IMG/VR virus record: IMGVR_UViG_3300020165_000007
Coordinates: 186,001-250,000 of that record
Reading direction: 5' to 3' (one strand)
DNA length: 64,000 nt
In this document: positions 8,006 through 30,603 of the stretch, piece by piece
Numbering within the stretch: the stretch's first letter is position 1
Layout of the letters: each line of letters starts with the position of its first letter
Made by a program: the position numbers and the translations under genes
The notes under the pieces: model-generated
What the model saw: the letters and a program-made list of their open reading frames with translations, nothing else
Databases searched by the model: none
Told to the model about the DNA's origin: nothing

Positions 8006-8066
8006 CCAATTTTTCCAAAAAATTTTAATCAATAAAAAACCCCTCCGTATTGGAGAGGGTCTTATT
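8006..8066. repeat. ~60-bp direct repeat copy B
   Basis: Near-identical to 7265-7324; overlaps the last codons of the 8025-8660 gene. Confidence 0.9.
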
Positions 8067-8660
8067 CCAACCTTCATACGCAATGGCTGTAGTACGTTCA
8101 AGTACTTCTGCAAAGTATTCTTCATTATCGTTAATTAAATCAACCATTACTGCCCTTTCATCTTCCCACCAATTATCAGTCTTTAAATTATTTCTCATCC
8201 ACTCGTTTTCAGACAGTGTTATTAAATAACGAGTTAAGTGTAATGATTCATGAGCCAAAATTCTGTTAATATATCCTGGTGATGATGCTCTTTGCACATT
8301 TATAAATTCAAATAGTTGGTCCCTATAAAAATTGGTTAAACCACCAATATATGCATCATCCATTTCCGTCCTTCCTTCAGATTCCATTTTGGTTATGTGT
8401 TCCTCAGCACCTTCTCTAGTTAGACCTGCAATTTCATTAGTACCAAAAGCATCAAAAATAGATAAACTACTATCCCCAAAAATTAAATGATAAGGTTGTA
8501 ATTTAATGTCCTTTTTATCTATAACATCAAATACACCAACGGTAACTAATTCATGTAGTAAAACACCTGTTTTTTTGGGTAAAGAAATGGACTTACTGAT
8601 AGATTTTTGTTCTCTATCTTCCAACTCTTCTTTTAATACTTTTCGGATTAATTCTTTCAT
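8025..8660 (-). CDS. HExxH (zincin-like) putative metallopeptidase with N-terminal leader
   Basis: ILAHESLHLT...NEEYFAE; leader MKELIRKVLKEE; TATTTAT 8665-8671. Confidence 0.65.
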   Translation of the reverse strand: MKELIRKVLKEELEDREQKSISKSISLPKKTGVLLHELVTVGVFDVIDKKDIKLQPYHLIFGDSSLSIFDAFGTNEIAGLTREGAEEHITKMESEGRTEMDDAYIGGLTNFYRDQLFEFINVQRASSPGYINRILAHESLHLTRYLITLSENEWMRNNLKTDNWWEDERAVMVDLINDNEEYFAEVLERTTAIAYEGWNKTLSNTEGFFID

Positions 8661-13074: not shown

Positions 13075-13701
13075 ATGGAAGATAATCTATCAGAGAAGTA
13101 TAACGAGTCACAAAGGATTAAACTGTTGTTTGACGGTTTGTTCTTTAACAAGATGGGATTGCCTTGTGATGTAGTGTATCTACCATCCATTTTTCAACAT
13201 TTGGTTGTTGTAAATATTGATTTATCTAAGATGTATCCATCTCTTGGTGGGAACCCTGATACGATTGAAGAACTCAAGAAAGGTAGGTTTCATAGGGACT
13301 TAACTAATTCTTTGAGATATATTGATGTTCTACCTATGGATGTTTATCCATATCCTGTGTTCTCTCTCGATAAAAAAGGTTTTGATGATTTGGATAATAT
13401 TAGAGATGGTGTGTTGAAATCTTATGAAGAAGTGAAAGATGAGATTGGTCATTGTCTAACTGAGGTCGATGTTGAATGGGTTCCTGATTTGGATACTATT
13501 TTAGGTAGGGACACAGTGGATGCAATCGATGAGTATATACTTAGTTTAGATGATGATATATCATTAGCCTTCAAACCATATTTATATTTCATGTATGGTC
13601 AGGGTAAGTGTGATGATATGAGTTTACCGTCAGCATATAAAGTATTTGACGATATCAACCCTGATATAAAATACATGAGACCTGAAAGAATTAAGAAATG
13701 A
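13075..13701 (+). CDS. Hypothetical protein, paralogous family with 11145 and 15530 genes
   Basis: VNIDLSKMYP...LRYID; TATTTAT 13063-13069. Confidence 0.7.
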   Translation: MEDNLSEKYNESQRIKLLFDGLFFNKMGLPCDVVYLPSIFQHLVVVNIDLSKMYPSLGGNPDTIEELKKGRFHRDLTNSLRYIDVLPMDVYPYPVFSLDKKGFDDLDNIRDGVLKSYEEVKDEIGHCLTEVDVEWVPDLDTILGRDTVDAIDEYILSLDDDISLAFKPYLYFMYGQGKCDDMSLPSAYKVFDDINPDIKYMRPERIKK

Positions 13702-14183
13702 GAGATTTAATTAAGAAAGTGTTAAGAGAAGAGTCCGAGTCTATGGACCTGATGCATTTTTGGAGTAACTCACCTAAGGTTACTGATGCAGATAACACAG
13801 AACAAATGGATGATTTCATGTGGCACATCATCAACTATGTGAATTTTCCATCTGACGGTAACTACAGAAGAATTAAAACTTTTATCAAATCTTTAATTAG
13901 GTATGGTTTGATAGATGTTGAATTCTATACCAACATGTATAGATGGTTGAATCGTAAGTTAAGGGAGATATCAACAATTGAAGAAGAATTTCAACTATCT
14001 TTGGATTATGTAGGTGGTGACGACTCATATAACGATTGGAAATGGTATGTTCTGTCTTTTGGTAAAGGTAATTTTGAAAGATTAAAGGAAGGTTATGATG
14101 ATAATATTACATTTGTTGAGTCACTAAACCCTGTAGAATCATTTCAGTATGCATGGCCTCATCCATATGATTTTAGAGACTGA
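13698..14183 (+). CDS. Leader-bearing hypothetical protein, DUF4240-like
   Basis: MRDLIKKVLREE leader; GGDDSYNDWKWYVLSFGK resembles DUF4240 motif. Confidence 0.55.
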   Translation: MRDLIKKVLREESESMDLMHFWSNSPKVTDADNTEQMDDFMWHIINYVNFPSDGNYRRIKTFIKSLIRYGLIDVEFYTNMYRWLNRKLREISTIEEEFQLSLDYVGGDDSYNDWKWYVLSFGKGNFERLKEGYDDNITFVESLNPVESFQYAWPHPYDFRD

Positions 14184-24257: not shown

Positions 24258-25190
24258 ATGAGAATTATAGTTACAGGAGGATTAGGTTTTATAGGTTCTA
24301 ATTTTGTTAATCTATTGAATGAGAGATTACCAAAAATCGAAGTAGTAATTTTAGATAAGATGACCTACGCAGCAGACCCAAATAGTATTATTAAGAATAA
24401 TAAATTAATTAAAAAAGATATTTGTGATGTCACACCTGAAGATTTAGGTGTATATGATTATATTGTTCATTTTGCCGCTGAAAGTCATGTAGATAATTCA
24501 ATATCAGATGGTAGACCTTTTATGAACACGAACATTATTGGAACATTTAACTTAGTTGAATGTGCAAAACAAAATAAATCTTTGAAAAAGTTTATTCACA
24601 TATCCACTGATGAGGTATACGGTGATATGGCAGATTCTGAATGGTTAAGTTCGAATGAGGACCACAACTTATCCCCAAGTTCTTATTACTCATCATCTAA
24701 AGCATCTTCAGACATGATTGTGTTGTCGTCTCACAGAACATTTGGTTTACCTTACCTTTTGACAAGAACTTGTAACAACTATGGTGAAAACCAAAATAAA
24801 GAGAAGTTTTTACCTAAAATTTTTGATTCTATAATTAACGAAAAAACAGTTCCTGTTTACGGTGATGGAAAACAGATTAGAGAGTGGATGTATGTTAAAG
24901 ATAATGTTGAAGTAATCTTTGACTTGATGATGGATGATAAAGTCGTAAATGAAGTATACAATATTGGTACTGACAATACTTTCTATAATTTAGAATTAGT
25001 TAAAAAGATATCTGAAATTATCGGTAAAGACGTAACATTTGAATTTGTTACTGACCGTTTAGGTCACGATAGAAAATACAATTTAGATTGTACGAAACTT
25101 AAAGAATACTACAAGTCAAAGGGTAAAGAGTACCAACCAAAAGATATTATTGATTGGATGAATCAGTTCCTCCTTGAAGAAGTGGTATAA
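24258..25190 (+). CDS. rfbB: dTDP-glucose 4,6-dehydratase
   Basis: TGGLGFIGSNF, HFAAESHVDNS, HISTDEVYG, YSSSK, CNNYG, DRLGHDRKY. Confidence 0.93.
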   Translation: MRIIVTGGLGFIGSNFVNLLNERLPKIEVVILDKMTYAADPNSIIKNNKLIKKDICDVTPEDLGVYDYIVHFAAESHVDNSISDGRPFMNTNIIGTFNLVECAKQNKSLKKFIHISTDEVYGDMADSEWLSSNEDHNLSPSSYYSSSKASSDMIVLSSHRTFGLPYLLTRTCNNYGENQNKEKFLPKIFDSIINEKTVPVYGDGKQIREWMYVKDNVEVIFDLMMDDKVVNEVYNIGTDNTFYNLELVKKISEIIGKDVTFEFVTDRLGHDRKYNLDCTKLKEYYKSKGKEYQPKDIIDWMNQFLLEEVV

Positions 25191-25527
25191 GTATATTTAA
25201 GTACTTCTTTTCTTCTGTTCTATTCAATACATAGGACATGTCAAAGTCTATACCTAGTCTTTCTTTTATACTGTTTTCTAAGTACTCCTGCATTTCAGGT
25301 GATTGTTCATAACCATAAAGAATAAGATTAGAAACTGATGGGAGTACTTTTAAATCAATAAAATCCAGTATATTTCTAACAATTATAAAGTAAGGTTTAC
25401 CATTCTTATGTAATACCGCAGTATCGTAGAGAAAACCTGGTAGGGTTCTATCTTCTAACTCTTGAAATTTGAGTCCATCGACAATATTGTCTATTTGTTT
25501 CTTTAATACATCAGGTAGAGTACTCAT
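25147..25527 (-). CDS. Hypothetical protein
   Basis: ORF coupled to upstream gene. Confidence 0.6.
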   Translation of the reverse strand: MSTLPDVLKKQIDNIVDGLKFQELEDRTLPGFLYDTAVLHKNGKPYFIIVRNILDFIDLKVLPSVSNLILYGYEQSPEMQEYLENSIKERLGIDFDMSYVLNRTEEKKYLNILIPLLQGGTDSSNQ

Positions 25528-26438
25528 TTTTTTAATTTTTTTAAGTTAATAGGTACTACATTTCCTTTATCTAAATACATTAATATATCCACTGATTTAT
25601 AACTACCATTCAAATATCTTTTAATGAAATCTTCTTTTTGACCTACACCAGTTTTTACCTGTACAGTATATAGTTTTCCTTTAAATTCTACTATTAAGTC
25701 GATACCTAATTTCATATCTATAAAATCACCATCCCCGCCTTGTCTTACAACTGTACCTCCCCACTTATCACTTTCAATCCACTTTACCGCTTTATTTTCA
25801 GTCGCTAAACCTATTCTATCCGTAACCCCTAATTTTTTATCTGCTATATCTATTAAGTTATGCCCATCAAACATATTACCAAACTCATCTTGGATATCAT
25901 TTTTATATTTTTTTAAGATGTCTTTTAATCGGGTCGGGTTATTTTCCTCAGAAATTTGTTGTAAGATATCATTTCTACCTTGTTCAAATAAAATGTCAGT
26001 AACCAACTCAGAAAGTAAGGTATAATTTGTGTTTATCTTATTTGAGTGGTGCCACCTTCCGTTAACTTCAACTCTTTTAAAATTTTCTAACTCTTCTAAG
26101 AGTTTATTGTAATACCAAGAATTTATTTTATTAGCATTTTTTAACTTAAGTAACCATTCTTTTGAGTTTTCCTTTTCCTCGTTACTCATAGGTGATTTTA
26201 TTTCATCCTGAATGTCGTTAACCAATTTTTTAAGACCTAATCCATTATCACTATGTAAAAATGCTCTTAAATTATTAATTTTTTTTCGTATCTCTGACTT
26301 ATTAAAACTCACGGGCTCGTTATTGGGTATACCGTCCATATTTGGTATACCGTCATAGTTGTCCCCCCGCGGGTGCATTGGGTCATTGGGTCCGATAAGG
26401 TCTTGTTCTCTTAATATTTTACGTATAAGTTCTTTCAT
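25524..26438 (-). CDS. Leader-bearing protein with C-terminal PD-(D/E)XK-like nuclease motif
   Basis: MKELIRKILREQ; G..TEN.A...GIDLIV...TVQVKT. Confidence 0.6.
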   Translation of the reverse strand: MKELIRKILREQDLIGPNDPMHPRGDNYDGIPNMDGIPNNEPVSFNKSEIRKKINNLRAFLHSDNGLGLKKLVNDIQDEIKSPMSNEEKENSKEWLLKLKNANKINSWYYNKLLEELENFKRVEVNGRWHHSNKINTNYTLLSELVTDILFEQGRNDILQQISEENNPTRLKDILKKYKNDIQDEFGNMFDGHNLIDIADKKLGVTDRIGLATENKAVKWIESDKWGGTVVRQGGDGDFIDMKLGIDLIVEFKGKLYTVQVKTGVGQKEDFIKRYLNGSYKSVDILMYLDKGNVVPINLKKLKK

Positions 26439-26476
26439 ACTTCAGGTAATTTCATGTTATTGTTTTTATCTATTAC

Positions 26477-27148
26477 TTATGACCCATATAATCTCCATGC
26501 ATTTCTATAGTTGTGGTCCATACCAGTCATATACAATCCGTACTTATCGATTATATCTAAAAAAGATTCTTTTGCTGCCATCCCTATTTCAGTAGTTACT
26601 TCATACAAATCATCTTGATGAATATCGTGGTCAATCATAAATAGTTCGTCAAAGTCCCATCTAGTATCATCATCTCTATCTAAAAATTGTACTGAACCGT
26701 TAGTTATGCGGACCTTCATACCTAATTCAGTACCATATGGATTTTCATCAGGGTTACCTTCCGTCCTACTGATAATCCCAATAGATAAAGGTGTCACATC
26801 CATTTCATATCCTCCTGAAGATATATGTCTTTTTTTACCTATACCTATTTCTTTTTTGGCTAATTCAAGTGCTTTATCATATCCACCATAGAATTTTATT
26901 TTCAGTTTGTCAATCTCCTCTTCGTATTCTAAACAATTTATACCAATATATCTACAGGGTGTTAGTTCTGTACCATTTTTACTCCAATAGTCAAATAAGA
27001 ATTCTTCTACTTGAGGACTTAGTTCCTTTTTTTTAGGTGCTCCTTGCCAACCTTCACTCATTTCATACTCATCACTTTTAGGTGAAGCGTCAGTAACATG
27101 TGAATACTCTAAGTCTTCTCTCAATATTTTACGTATAAGTTCTTTCAT
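26477..27148 (-). CDS. Leader-bearing hypothetical protein
   Basis: MKELIRKILRED; TATTTAT 27158-27164. Confidence 0.75.
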   Translation of the reverse strand: MKELIRKILREDLEYSHVTDASPKSDEYEMSEGWQGAPKKKELSPQVEEFLFDYWSKNGTELTPCRYIGINCLEYEEEIDKLKIKFYGGYDKALELAKKEIGIGKKRHISSGGYEMDVTPLSIGIISRTEGNPDENPYGTELGMKVRITNGSVQFLDRDDDTRWDFDELFMIDHDIHQDDLYEVTTEIGMAAKESFLDIIDKYGLYMTGMDHNYRNAWRLYGS

Positions 27149-27174
27149 AGTATGTTAATAAATATCGTTAAAGT

Positions 27175-27208
27175 AAAAAAACCTCAGTCGACTAAGACTG
27201 AGGTTTTT
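27175..27208 (-). terminator. Intrinsic terminator downstream of large ncRNA
   Basis: Minus strand AAAAACCTCAGTC-TTAGTC-GACTGAGGTTTTTTT. Confidence 0.85.
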
Positions 27209-27238
27209 AATGTTATATATATTGGGGTAGGGAATTAA

Positions 27239-28060
27239 AGGACGCTGAGATTACACGTTTGAATGACTCGTCTTTTGTGGGATTATTATTACTTTTTCCC
27301 CACTTATCCACCCCATTGACAGGGGTATCGAATCAGTGTCGGTTACTATCGGTAACCACTCGTATCGTTGATAACTACTCAACCGTTACTAAAATCTCTT
27401 AAGACTTGCGGTCTCATAAAGGGTCGGCCAACCCACGAGTTGTTTCACAATCGACATCCTTAGACTTGCGGTCTGAAGGAAAACTTCGTTGACAAAGGTC
27501 CGAAGTATTAGACACCTTTCGTCATCAACGCTCGAAGACTCTTGCTTTTCTAATTGATTTTAGATAAACAACATGGATTTATGAAAGATGCGCTTCGAGA
27601 GAAGTTCTATACCTTTGGAGTACAGAATGCTTCACACCTCTCTGTAAGTCTGTCAACTTACGGTAAGTTAGGACCACGTCGACTTGTCGTCTCGGAGACC
27701 CCTCATACTGGTACTCAGCCCTACAACACCTGACAGGGTGTGTCGAACCGTCACCTGTAGCTTTTCCTATTGATATCACTATCTCAACTCTGATATTCCA
27801 CGGACTCAGAGTGGTTTCATCCCTTTAGCAGTTGCCCTTAGGGTTTTGACCGTAGCCACTTTGTTTAGTTGTCAGAGTAAACTCTGCGGATATCTGAGAG
27901 TTGCTCAACACTCTTCAATCCCTTTAGTCCTGTTACCAGGGTTATCTAACGACGCTAAACCGCCGATGACTAATAACTCACTGTGATTTTAAAAAAAGGG
28001 GGTTAATCTTTTTTGATATAAACTCGATTCAGTGAGTGTTCGTCATTATTATTTCAAAGA
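27239..28060 (-). ncRNA. Large (~820 nt) structured non-coding RNA, GOLLD-like
   Basis: GC-elevated, no credible ORF, dense hairpins with GNRA loops on minus strand, duplicated AGACCGCAAGUCU, 3' end GUGUAAUCUCAGCG; host-type promoter upstream, terminator downstream. Family call is from recalled size and motifs. Confidence 0.75.
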
Positions 28061-28839: not shown

Positions 28840-29196
28840 ATGAAGGTAATGATAAATAATAACATTTTTAAAGTCAAATTATGTACGAGACAAAAATCGA
28901 TAGAGGAGGGAATGCAAAATAAAAACTTTAACGAATCTTTTAATGGAATGTTATTTATGATGCCAAAAACTACCGAACAAAGTTTTTGGACGTATAACTG
29001 TATTATTCCTTTAGATATATTAATGATTAATAGAGGCGAAATAAATGAGGTACATCATAACTGCAAACCTTGTCACAAACAATCACAATGTGATTCATAT
29101 AAAGGTTACGGTGGTGAAGTATTAGAATTACCTGGAGGTACTTGTAAAAGTTTAGACATTAAAAAAGGAGACTCAGTCTCCTTTTCTTTAGTTTGA
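28840..29196 (+). CDS. DUF192 family protein
   Basis: GMLF...SFWTYNCIIPLDILMI...VLELPGG...IKKGD; start reassigned to 28840. Confidence 0.85.
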   Translation: MKVMINNNIFKVKLCTRQKSIEEGMQNKNFNESFNGMLFMMPKTTEQSFWTYNCIIPLDILMINRGEINEVHHNCKPCHKQSQCDSYKGYGGEVLELPGGTCKSLDIKKGDSVSFSLV

Positions 29197-30603
29197 TTTA
29201 CTTTCGTTAATCTTTTCTTTTAGAACTTCAACGAATCTTCGTTGAATCATCTTTACAAACTTAACGTATGGAGTGTCTCCCTCTTTTTTACCATACTTCT
29301 TCTTACCTGAAGGAGGTCTCTTACTTCTACCAAAATAATTTAGTGCTGAAATATTTGTAATACATTTATGTCCTCCTGAATTTGCTTGAATCATCTCCCA
29401 AGCAGGAACACCTAACTTATCAAGTATTGCCCATTCACCATCCGTTAAATCATTATATGGTTTGTTCATTATTGTCTTTAATCTATCCATATACTCTTCA
29501 CCACCGTCTATAGACCTAACTTTATCTCCATAAAACGCTTCTAAATCGGCGTTAGTAAACCCTACAGACTCTTGGTCAAAACTTTTACCTGATTCTGATA
29601 TCCACTTAATAGTTGATAATGGTATTATTTTATCTCTGAGTTGTGGTTCCCATTTCGCTAAGACTTCTTGAGCAATCTCACCTAAGTTTACACCTTTAAG
29701 TTCTCTCTCACCCTTAAATGGATTACAACTTGCCTGAACTAATCCCATGGGCCAAGCGATAACTAAAAAATCTGCGTCAGGATTGTTTTTAAATGGTGTA
29801 TATCTATCATATGAACCCGGTTTAAACATAGAACCTCCACCATATTGAACGATTATTCCGTCATCTACTTTTACTTTATCACTACTATCTTGTTTTTTCA
29901 CATAACCTTGTTGATTTAAAACCATTTCCTCAGGTGATGCATATCCTTCTTCTTGTGCAATTCTATTAATATTTTGAAATATATTTAATAGTGATGGTGA
30001 TGAAGACATAACTAATTTTTCTAAGAACTTAGGTTTGTTTTTATAAGCCAGTAGTAGTTTATTCGTGGCCAACCCTAAAGCCATTTTATTTTTTTGTAAT
30101 GATTTATCCTTTTGTAATTTAAATATAAAGTTCATTATATCTTGAGGTTCAAGACCAAATCTAGCGAAATCTGCCGAATCAACTGTTGATATTAGTGTAA
30201 TATCATCTGATGGGAATATGTCTGATGGTGACATAATATCAGAAAGTGTTGCCACATTTGAACGAGATGACCTAAAGGATGTTGAAGTATCTCCCTCAAC
30301 ACCCGTCTGACTATCGTGGTGGTCTGTATGAACCACAAACATAGGTTTACCATGTGCAAAATCTACAAGAACTGGCATTGTGTCTCCTTGAGCGTCCTGT
30401 TTTTTGACTGCAAACTCTTTATCTCCGTATTGAATTATCTCAGAGTCTACTACTTCTATTCCGTTATTTTCCAAATAGTTTTTCATCGCTAAGGCGGTAG
30501 TTACACCGTCTAAGTCTTGGTGGAAATATATCTTAGCCTTCTTGTACCTATCTGCAAGTGCCTTAATATTTCTTAATCCTGTCTCGTTTAATATTTTTTT
30601 CAT
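29188..30603 (-). CDS. DHH/DHHA1-like phosphoesterase
   Basis: YFHQDLDGVTTA, VDFAH, TDHHD, C-terminal GGH. Confidence 0.7.
   Translation of the reverse strand: MKKILNETGLRNIKALADRYKKAKIYFHQDLDGVTTALAMKNYLENNGIEVVDSEIIQYGDKEFAVKKQDAQGDTMPVLVDFAHGKPMFVVHTDHHDSQTGVEGDTSTSFRSSRSNVATLSDIMSPSDIFPSDDITLISTVDSADFARFGLEPQDIMNFIFKLQKDKSLQKNKMALGLATNKLLLAYKNKPKFLEKLVMSSSPSLLNIFQNINRIAQEEGYASPEEMVLNQQGYVKKQDSSDKVKVDDGIIVQYGGGSMFKPGSYDRYTPFKNNPDADFLVIAWPMGLVQASCNPFKGERELKGVNLGEIAQEVLAKWEPQLRDKIIPLSTIKWISESGKSFDQESVGFTNADLEAFYGDKVRSIDGGEEYMDRLKTIMNKPYNDLTDGEWAILDKLGVPAWEMIQANSGGHKCITNISALNYFGRSKRPPSGKKKYGKKEGDTPYVKFVKMIQRRFVEVLKEKINESKSN

What the first reader, a model, noticed from the sequence alone, without database searches (positions are those of the whole stretch)
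26406..27149. Leader exchanged as a DNA module between adjacent unrelated genes
Seen: 26406-26439 and 27116-27149 are 33/34 identical, covering exactly MKELIRKILRE (including synonymous sites), and similarity stops right after the Glu codon. This is direct evidence that the leader is a recently copied unit whose boundary matches the proposed cleavage site.
Basis: seen in the sequence. Interest (0 to 1): 0.6.

Follow-up and report, generated by a model that had tools for sequence, protein, structure and literature searches.

The report
Shared capsid-targeting-like leader on phage genes
Two neighbouring, unrelated genes of an uncultured marine T4-like jumbo phage start with the same 11-residue leader because one copy was recently overwritten by the other; the leader looks like T4's capsid-targeting tag, so it may mark proteins that the phage packs into its head and injects.

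Summary
26406-26438 and 27116-27148 (minus strand) differ at one synonymous base. Both encode MKELIRKILRE at the start of genes A (304 aa) and B (223 aa). Similarity starts at the ATG and stops after the Glu codon.

The bodies are unrelated: no BLASTP hit, profile comparison aligns only the leader, and the predicted folds differ. A has a PD-(D/E)XK nuclease-like C-domain; B has no clear match.

In a related contig, A's ortholog is 96% identical in the body but only 23/33 in the leader. B orthologs keep the B-type codons even where A is absent. So A's leader was replaced by B's. A already had a leader of the same family, so this is homogenisation, not first acquisition.

The leader heads at least 119 proteins in 61 unrelated families across uncultured phage contigs, 2-8 per genome. 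The host genome has a T4-type head module with a gp21-family protease, and the leader ends in that protease's L-x-E motif. T4's adjacent ipII and ipIII genes show the same pattern.

Best reading: a capsid-targeting-sequence analogue on internal or ejected proteins, shuffled by recombination at the leader. The evolutionary part is shown. Cleavage and packaging are inferred. I rate it a new member of a known kind.

The parts
26477..27148 (-). Gene B (223 aa): leader, about 30-residue disordered linker, then an alpha/beta body with no clear structural relative
   Evidence: ORF. Homolog alignment A3 keeps the leader in all 16 members. AF2 model has pLDDT 78.8 with residues 1-39 low. No convincing PDB match: Foldseek E >= 0.27, best VIA Z 5.4.
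27116..27148 (-). Leader of B (MKELIRKILRE, ending I-L-R-E), the native copy
   Evidence: The same codons (CTT ATH CGT) occur in B orthologs L002, L003, L004 and L005, including genomes that lack A.
25524..26438 (-). Gene A (304 aa): leader, disordered linker, helical domain, then a C-terminal PD-(D/E)XK nuclease-like domain (about residues 205-304)
   Evidence: ORF. Alignment A1 has conserved GGDGDFIDM, DLIV and QVK blocks. AF2 pLDDT 84.9. VIA top hits: I-Ssp6803I at Z 9.3 (rmsd 2.9 A over 88 residues), then Hjc resolvases, tRNA splicing endonucleases and restriction enzymes. Foldseek gives the same families weakly.
26406..26438 (-). Leader of A, a B-type copy that replaced A's own version
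   Evidence: 32/33 identical to the window's B leader, and also 32/33 to L005's B' leader, with which it shares the TTA Leu codon. 23/33 identical to the leader of its own ortholog in L005, whose body is 813/846 identical.
26439..26455 (-). Relic of the first 17 nt of the downstream 126-aa gene, duplicated upstream of A. It now forms a 6-codon mini-ORF whose TGA overlaps A's ATG. It is the left copy of an imperfect direct repeat flanking the A cassette.
   Evidence: Three-way alignment of window, L002 and L005. L002/L003 lack A and read exactly as the pre-insertion or post-deletion junction would.
25499..25527 (-). Start of the 126-aa gene (its ATG overlaps A's TGA); right copy of the flanking direct repeat
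26364..26402 (-). GC-rich insertion of 13 codons (12 net, replacing one Ala codon) just after leader+Gln in A. Absent from the L005/P0002 ortholog and single-copy in the genome.
8025..8660 (-). Third leader gene C (211 aa, MKELIRKVLKE); the body contains an HExxH motif
   Evidence: No Pfam or PHROG family.
13698..14183 (+). Fourth leader gene D (161 aa, MRDLIKKVLRE)

Best explanation
MKELIRKILRE is a portable N-terminal targeting propeptide. It is the functional analogue of the capsid targeting sequence (CTS) of phage T4 internal proteins, here in an uncultured marine 270-kb T4-like ('far-T4') jumbo phage. Inferred mechanism: the short basic amphipathic helix brings otherwise unrelated cargo proteins into the scaffolding core of the prohead. 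The gp21-family prohead protease then cuts after the invariant Glu of the L-x-E motif, and the mature cargo stays in the head and is ejected with the DNA. Shown: the same about 33 nt head many unrelated genes, so they act as a patch of homology for recombination. Cargo bodies are swapped, inserted or deleted at the leader's 3' edge, and neighbouring leaders are homogenised. In this window, gene A is a presence/absence cassette inserted into the 5' end of the next gene, and its own leader version was overwritten by gene B's.
For: Shown:
- Leader identity, sharp boundaries and non-chance.
- The bodies are unrelated by sequence, by profile and by predicted fold.
- The A ortholog has a 96.1% identical body but a 23/33 leader, P = 3e-7.
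- B-type codons are native to B, including in genomes without A.
- A is a cassette flanked by a direct repeat and is absent in L002/L003.
- The window's B and L005's B' are identical or near-identical upstream and in the leader (33/33, 31/33), then fall to about 70% and lower.
- The leader heads 119 distinct proteins in 61 unrelated clusters from at least 119 viral contigs, almost always at true ORF starts.
- Glu11 is present in 86 of 114 proteins when it is not imposed by the search, and in every A- or B-family member found through body homology that carries the leader; three distant A-body homologs (P0017-P0019) have no leader at all.
- There are only 2-8 copies per genome, with 0 in controls.
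- In 14 other adjacent pairs with unrelated bodies, codon identity is 0.85 against 0.66 between contigs, Mann-Whitney p = 5e-5.

Supporting the CTS reading:
- The genome encodes TerL, a T4 portal, a Peptidase_S77 (gp21-family) protease, an acidic scaffold and a Gp23 capsid protein in T4 order.
- The four other leader-bearing records in which the protease was found were 64%, 98%, 100% and 100% complete.
- gp21 cuts after Glu at L/I-x-E, and the T4 CTS is a 10-residue cleaved propeptide shared by otherwise unrelated internal proteins (PMC9026906, PMC3012670, PMC12373910).
- T4's adjacent ipII and ipIII have 30/30 identical leader nucleotides ending at the Glu codon.
- AF2 models show a leader helix followed by a disordered linker before the folded body.
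Against: There is no protein-level evidence. Cleavage, packaging and ejection are all untested, and no cultured relative carries the leader: the immuto Flavobacterium phages, Microcystis phage Mel-JY01 and two uncultured huge phages lack it. The leader has no sequence similarity to T4's MKTYQEFIAE beyond Met-Lys, spaced hydrophobic residues and the terminal Glu. Some cargo are housekeeping-type enzymes that are not obvious capsid passengers, such as a CCA-adding/PolyA_pol enzyme and an Fe/Mn superoxide dismutase. The protease-plus-leader complex prediction gave no verdict. Higher codon identity within a contig could partly reflect shared codon bias.
Confidence: 0.6

Rival explanations
1. The leader is an uncleaved N-terminal amphipathic helix with another shared role, for example docking to a phage assembly factor, chaperone, membrane or nucleic acid. 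It is still moved between genes by recombination.
For: It is a basic amphipathic helix (hydrophobic residues at 1, 4, 5, 8, 9; Lys/Arg at 2, 6, 7, 10). Some cargo are enzymes that need not be in the capsid. No cleavage data exist.
Against: The invariant terminal Glu in an L-x-E context, and the variable linker straight after it, are what a Glu-specific prohead protease site predicts. The gp21-family protease is present in the window's genome and was found in 4 of 5 other leader-bearing records tested. The anatomy parallels T4 ipII/ipIII exactly.
Confidence: 0.2
2. The conserved element acts at the DNA or mRNA level, as a translation-initiation or expression cassette, rather than as a peptide.
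For: The leader is A/T-rich, sits exactly at the start codon, and adjacent copies are identical in nucleotides.
Against: Across contigs the peptide is kept while codons vary: mean codon identity is 0.66, with Leu as TTA/CTT/CTA and Arg as AGA/CGT. Nothing upstream of the ATG is shared between A and B. Only 2-8 genes per genome carry it.
Confidence: 0.07
3. Plain tandem duplication of one gene followed by divergence of the bodies.
For: The genes are adjacent, on the same strand, with the same start.
Against: Profile-profile comparison aligns only 14 N-terminal columns. The predicted folds differ. A is absent from otherwise collinear relatives. A's ortholog carries a different leader on a 96% identical body.
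Confidence: 0.02
4. Chance identity from codon bias, or an assembly chimera.
For: The genome is AT-rich with skewed codon usage, and the repeat is short.
Against: P is about 0.009 even given the same peptide, and both copies share rare codons. Independent contigs from several studies span each leader, and some span both.
Confidence: 0.01

Closest known systems
Capsid targeting sequence (CTS) of phage T4 internal proteins IPI, IPII, IPIII and Alt, processed by the gp21 prohead protease
   Same: A 10-11-residue N-terminal leader starting Met-Lys and ending hydrophobic-x-Glu, shared by otherwise unrelated proteins. The phage has a gp21-family (S77) protease and a T4-type head module. There are a few carriers per genome. 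Adjacent carriers have nucleotide-identical leaders that end at the Glu codon (T4 ipII/ipIII 30/30; here 32/33).
   Different: The leader sequence is unrelated (MKELIRKILRE versus MKTYQEFIAE) and is basic. In T4 the ribosome-binding region upstream is also identical between ipII and ipIII, whereas here nothing upstream is shared. Cargo is larger (69-552 aa) and includes recognisable enzymes. The phage is a distant, uncultured marine jumbo relative whose capsid protein is only about 39% identical to the nearest isolate. Cleavage and packaging are not demonstrated.
Hyperplastic internal-protein loci of T-even phages (Repoila et al. 1994; more than 30 IP variants, Comeau et al. 2007, as cited in PMC2839356 and PMC3012670)
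   Same: Presence/absence and replacement of cargo genes between close relatives, with only the leader conserved. Recombination is implied at conserved flanks.
   Different: In T-even phages the shuffling has been linked to promoter/stem-loop elements flanking the genes. Here the breakpoints lie at the leader's 3' edge, and the A cassette sits between a direct repeat made from the next gene's 5' end.
Long N-terminal propeptides of ejection proteins in phiKZ-like and SPN3US giant phages
   Same: Head or ejection proteins are targeted by propeptides that a gp21-related protease removes after Glu. The paralogs gp53 and gp54 keep identical N-termini (PMC5694885).
   Different: Those propeptides are mostly longer than 100 residues, with S/A-x-E motifs, and belong to a different phage lineage.

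Membership tests
T4-type CTS-bearing internal/ejected head proteins | The phage assembles heads with a gp21-family (Peptidase_S77) prohead protease and a T4-type core/shell module | tested here: met
   PF03420 at 81 bits at G000:C1:116087-116500. Terminase_6N, Portal_T4 and Gp23 are neighbours in T4 order.
T4-type CTS-bearing internal/ejected head proteins | A short N-terminal leader shared by proteins whose mature parts are unrelated | tested here: met
   Four genes in this genome. 119 proteins in 61 BLASTP-unrelated clusters elsewhere. hhalign of the A and B families matches only the leader.
T4-type CTS-bearing internal/ejected head proteins | The leader ends in the protease's L/I-x-Glu cleavage motif | tested here: met
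   I-L-(R/K)-E. Glu11 is present in every A- and B-family member that carries the leader, and in 86/114 proteins when not imposed. Motif as described in PMC9026906.
T4-type CTS-bearing internal/ejected head proteins | The leader is removed by the prohead protease during maturation | not testable with these tools
   Needs N-terminal sequencing or mass spectrometry. The complex prediction gave no verdict.
T4-type CTS-bearing internal/ejected head proteins | The proteins are present inside mature heads and are ejected into the host | not testable with these tools
   No cultured phage carries the leader.
T4-type CTS-bearing internal/ejected head proteins | Sequence homology of the leader to the T4 CTS | tested here: not met
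   Compared with T4 ipI/ipII/ipIII read from NC_000866: only Met-Lys, the hydrophobic spacing and the terminal Glu are shared. It is an analogue, not a demonstrable homolog.
T-even hyperplastic IP locus | Cargo genes vary by presence/absence or replacement between close relatives while flanks and leader persist | tested here: met
   A is absent in L002/L003 but present in the window and L005. The B body is 67% identical against a leader of 31/33 between window and L005.
PD-(D/E)XK nuclease superfamily (body of gene A only) | The alpha-beta-beta-beta-alpha-beta core fold with a conserved acidic/Lys motif | tested here: inconclusive
   The fold match for residues 205-304 is consistent: Z 9.3 to I-Ssp6803I, followed by Hjc and splicing or restriction endonucleases. 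The conserved residues are D...D-x12-Q-x-K rather than the canonical E-x-K. The Pfam PDDEXK_5 hit is below threshold.

The most novel reading that the evidence does not exclude
The leader may not be a capsid tag at all. It could be an address label for a different phage-built compartment. The most exotic candidate is the multimeric cage formed by the GOLLD RNA, which lies immediately upstream of gene B and is present in every complete leader-bearing genome tested. In that reading a basic amphipathic leader would load diverse enzymes onto or into an RNA nanocage.
Probability: 0.03. Interest if true: 0.9.

Novelty: new member of a known kind. Interest (0 to 1): 0.5.

Why it matters
If the leader is a capsid-targeting tag, it gives a sequence-only way to list the proteins that a large clade of uncultured marine jumbo phages injects with their DNA. 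In T4 these are first-strike anti-defence proteins. Here the candidates include a PD-(D/E)XK nuclease-like protein, an Acb1-like phosphodiesterase, a C39-like peptidase, a GNAT acetyltransferase, a CCA-adding enzyme and a superoxide dismutase. It would also show that the T4 scheme, in which one short leader serves many swappable cargoes and also acts as the recombination handle, is not peculiar to the T-even phages and recurs with an unrelated leader in a distant lineage. For the finding itself, it explains why two unrelated neighbouring genes share 33 nucleotides.

Tried and rejected
- Pfam and PHROG scans of the four leader proteins gave nothing above threshold.
- tblastn of A, B and two large cargo families against 50,697 isolated phage genomes gave no match.
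- An exact search for the leader DNA in IMG/VR found only the two close relatives already known.
- A literature search for the leader peptide found no paper. Repoila et al. 1994 is not held.
- The complex prediction of the prohead protease with residues 1-45 of B scored 0.00. That is no verdict, neither for nor against.
- The ESM Atlas feature search for B's body gave no usable hit.
- Foldseek and VIA searches for B gave nothing above background.
- I asked whether the scaffold protein's MKEEISELVKE is a leader. I rejected this because the open frame continues upstream to an earlier Met, so the motif is internal.
- I asked whether MKKILNE at the start of the 471-aa gene is a shortened leader. 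I rejected this because it aligns with the post-leader residues of the leader-bearing homolog in L053.
- I asked whether leader genes sit next to GOLLD in other genomes. They do not in three complete genomes.
- The ATATTTAT promoter-like motif upstream of B is shared with head genes. It also precedes 45 of 280 genes, so it does not show late expression.

Full report
**1. Observation**

Two minus-strand ORFs lie head to tail: B at 26477..27148 (223 aa) and A at 25524..26438 (304 aa). Both start with MKELIRKILRE.

- Nothing upstream of the ATGs is alike. After the Glu codon the genes diverge at once.
- The pattern has no chance match in 100 shuffles of the window.
- Using codon usage from 150 long ORFs of the same genome, two independent encodings of this peptide would agree in at least 9 of 10 codons with P about 0.009. 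Both copies use the rare CTT (16% of Leu) and CGT (13% of Arg).
- The arrangement is not an assembly artefact. The stretch is held nearly complete by 14 DNA runs of 12 studies of marine, seawater and estuary samples, and in part by metatranscriptome assemblies.
- A contig from a run not flagged as a possible source covers 25100-26612 with no differences, and another covers 27090-27354. One contig from a further run covers 25100-27655, across both leaders.

**2. Context**

- The window is bases 186001-250000 of a 270,383-bp IMG/VR virus record with 33% G+C, estimated 88% complete.
- The record has a T4-type head module in T4 gene order: large terminase, T4 portal, two small proteins, a Peptidase_S77 (gp21-family) prohead protease, an acidic scaffold-like protein and a Gp23 major capsid protein.
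- The nearest isolates by capsid protein are only 35-42% identical: Flavobacterium immuto phages, Microcystis phage Mel-JY01 and Rhodothermus RM378. This is a distant 'far-T4' jumbo phage.
- Two more genes in the genome, both in the window, carry variants of the leader: C at 8025..8660 (MKELIRKVLKE) and D at 13698..14183 (MRDLIKKVLRE).

**3. The bodies are unrelated**

- With the leader removed, all six pairwise BLASTP comparisons of A, B, C and D give nothing (best E 0.036).
- Family alignments were built for A (18 sequences, A1) and B (16 sequences, A3). A profile-profile comparison aligns only the 14 N-terminal columns.
- AlphaFold models built from those alignments show the same plan in both proteins: a short N-terminal helix, about 30 low-confidence residues, then a confident fold (pLDDT 84.9 for A, 78.8 for B).
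- The folds themselves differ. Residues about 205-304 of A match PD-(D/E)XK nucleases. The best is I-Ssp6803I at Z 9.3 (rmsd 2.9 A, 88 residues), followed by Hjc resolvases, tRNA-splicing endonucleases and restriction enzymes.
- B has no match above background.

**4. The leader was exchanged, from B to A**

- Relatives were fetched from IMG/VR. In L005, the B-like gene is followed by an A ortholog.
- The A bodies are 813/846 (96.1%) identical in DNA. The leaders are only 23/33 identical, MRNLIKKILRE against MKELIRKILRE. Under the body's divergence rate this has P = 3e-7.
- An independent protein record, P0002, has the same L005-type leader.
- The window's A leader is instead identical, apart from one synonymous base, to the B leader of either genome.
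- B orthologs in L002, L003 and L004 keep the characteristic CTT-ATH-CGT codons. L002 and L003 have no A gene at all. The B-type sequence is therefore native to B and was copied onto A.
- A-family members at about 50% identity also carry leaders (for example MKDLIKKILKE) with Lys at position 6, as in L005. So A had a leader long before, and the event was a replacement of one version by another.
- The copied tract ends at the Glu codon, because the next codon (Gln) is the A-family state.

**5. A is a cassette**

- Relative to L002, the window carries A as an insertion running exactly from its ATG to its stop. The stop overlaps the next gene's ATG.
- Immediately upstream of A's ATG lie the first 17 nt of the L002-type downstream gene (26439..26455). 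They now form a 6-codon mini-ORF.
- The A cassette is therefore flanked by an imperfect direct repeat of that gene's 5' end. L002 reads as the state before insertion, or after deletion between the repeats.
- The window's backbone (B and the 126-aa gene) is L002-like, at 88% and 82% DNA identity. The A body is L005-like.
- Between the window and L005, identity is 33/33 just upstream of B and 31/33 in the leader, then 25/33, 23/33 and lower in the body. The 3' edge of the leader is thus also a point where similarity breaks in B.
- Short, low-depth contigs in two runs join the same leader to other bodies, with breakpoints at 26403 and 27114. This is weak evidence but points the same way.

**6. 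The leader is a widespread module**

- Nearly all of the 140 matches sit at true ORF starts.
- The 119 distinct proteins of at least 60 aa form 61 clusters with no BLASTP similarity between clusters. Lengths run from 69 to 552 aa.
- With positions 10-11 left free, 86 of 114 proteins have Glu at position 11 and 81 have Lys or Arg at position 10. Most exceptions belong to one different family.
- Genomes carry 2-8 copies, and the reversed-pattern controls give 0.
- A Peptidase_S77 gene was found in four of the five other leader-bearing records tested, including all three that are at least 98% complete, and GOLLD RNA in those three; the window's own genome has both.
- More distant relatives lack the leader.
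- Recognisable cargo includes Fe/Mn superoxide dismutase, a PolyA_pol/CCA-adding enzyme, a C39-like peptidase, a GNAT, an Acb1-like 2H phosphodiesterase and PD-(D/E)XK domains. Most cargo has no Pfam family.
- Bodies occur both with and without the leader. P0017-P0019 are A-body homologs that start after the linker, and P0018's start was checked on its contig.
- The window's own 471-aa gene (29188..30603) has a 552-aa homolog in L053 that carries the leader.
- Homogenisation of neighbouring leaders appears to be general. In 14 adjacent pairs with unrelated bodies in other contigs, codon identity at shared residues averages 0.85, against 0.66 for 4014 between-contig pairs (Mann-Whitney p = 5e-5). 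Shared codon bias and related contigs may inflate this.

**7. Mechanism**

What is established for T4:
- gp21 cuts head proteins after Glu at L/I-x-E.
- The first 10 residues of IPIII are sufficient to target foreign proteins into the head, and they are then cleaved off.
- The internal proteins share nothing but this leader, and several are injected anti-restriction proteins (PMC9026906, PMC3012670, PMC12373910, PMC5694885).

What I read directly from the T4 genome:
- The adjacent genes ipII and ipIII have leaders identical in all 30 nucleotides, ending at the Glu codon, on unrelated bodies.
- This is the same anatomy as in the window.

What follows for the window:
- The window leader is 11 residues long, starts Met-Lys, has hydrophobic residues spaced as an amphipathic helix, and ends I-L-R-E.
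- I infer that it is a CTS analogue, cut after Glu11 by the S77 protease, and that A, B, C and D are internal or ejected proteins.
- The evolutionary part (modularity, exchange, cassette behaviour) is shown.
- Targeting, cleavage and ejection are inferred.
- The leader is not homologous in sequence to T4's, and some cargo are unexpected passengers. I therefore give the full statement 0.6.

**8. Rivals**

I considered four rival explanations:
- An uncleaved helix with another shared role.
- An mRNA-level element.
- Tandem duplication.
- Chance or an assembly artefact.

They are weighed in the Rival explanations section. The last two are excluded by the tests above.

**9. Novelty**

- Adjacent unrelated genes with a nucleotide-identical, cleavage-delimited leader is textbook T4 biology. 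The finding is therefore a new member of a known kind.
- What is new is the leader sequence, the distant uncultured marine clade and the breadth of tagged cargo.
- No paper in the searchable library contains the motif.
Noticed in passing
window 27242-27642 (-), GC-rich block to about 27990: A full-length GOLLD RNA (Rfam RF02032, 299.8 bits, model positions 1-416) lies directly upstream of gene B, followed by a terminator-like hairpin at about 27172-27205. It is conserved in L002 and L005 and is also present in three complete related genomes. In those three genomes no leader gene lies next to it.
   Followed up: partly
window 26364-26402 (-): A GC-rich insertion of 13 codons (12 net, replacing one Ala codon) sits just after leader+Gln in gene A and contains an internal micro-repeat. 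It is absent from the 96%-identical ortholog and is single-copy in the genome. Short metagenome contigs with GC-rich foreign flanks match about 35 nt of it. Its origin is unexplained.
   Followed up: partly
window 26435-26455 (-): A six-codon mini-ORF (MKLPEV-stop) made from a duplicated 5' end of the downstream 126-aa gene. Its TGA overlaps A's ATG, which could couple translation.
   Followed up: partly
window 8025-8660 (-): Leader gene C contains an HExxH motif (HESLH), suggesting a metallopeptidase-like cargo. It has no Pfam or PHROG family.
   Followed up: no
window 29188-30603 (-) and L053:5745-7400 (-): The window's conserved 471-aa gene has no leader, but a 552-aa homolog in another contig carries one. 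This is an example of leader gain or loss on a conserved body.
   Followed up: partly
many loci, e.g. L022, L026, L037, L074, L082: A second short motif, acidic residues then D-F-D-W (or E-F-E-W), follows the leader directly in many otherwise different cargo proteins.
   Followed up: no
P0016 (491 aa, metagenome protein): An A-family member fused behind another leader-bearing protein. It therefore has one N-terminal leader and a second, internal, leader-like segment.
   Followed up: no
whole genome G000; e.g. 17 nt upstream of B (window about 27158-27165): The octamer ATATTTAT lies within 45 nt upstream of 45 of 280 predicted genes (98 occurrences in all). These include the portal, the protease and other head genes, and gene B. 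It is a likely promoter element of unknown class.
   Followed up: partly
L132-L134, L140, L141, L144, L145, L153, L177, L179: A separate family of about 145-aa proteins starts MKKFIKKIFGIDK. It shares the first nine positions of the pattern but has Gly-Ile instead of Lys/Arg-Glu, so it is probably a different N-terminal module.
   Followed up: no
L199:2880-3000: The leaderless A-body homolog P0018 is preceded by a TAnnTTTG-like motif typical of Bacteroidota promoters (recalled from memory). Together with the Flavobacterium phage affinity of the capsid protein, this hints at a Bacteroidota host.
   Followed up: no
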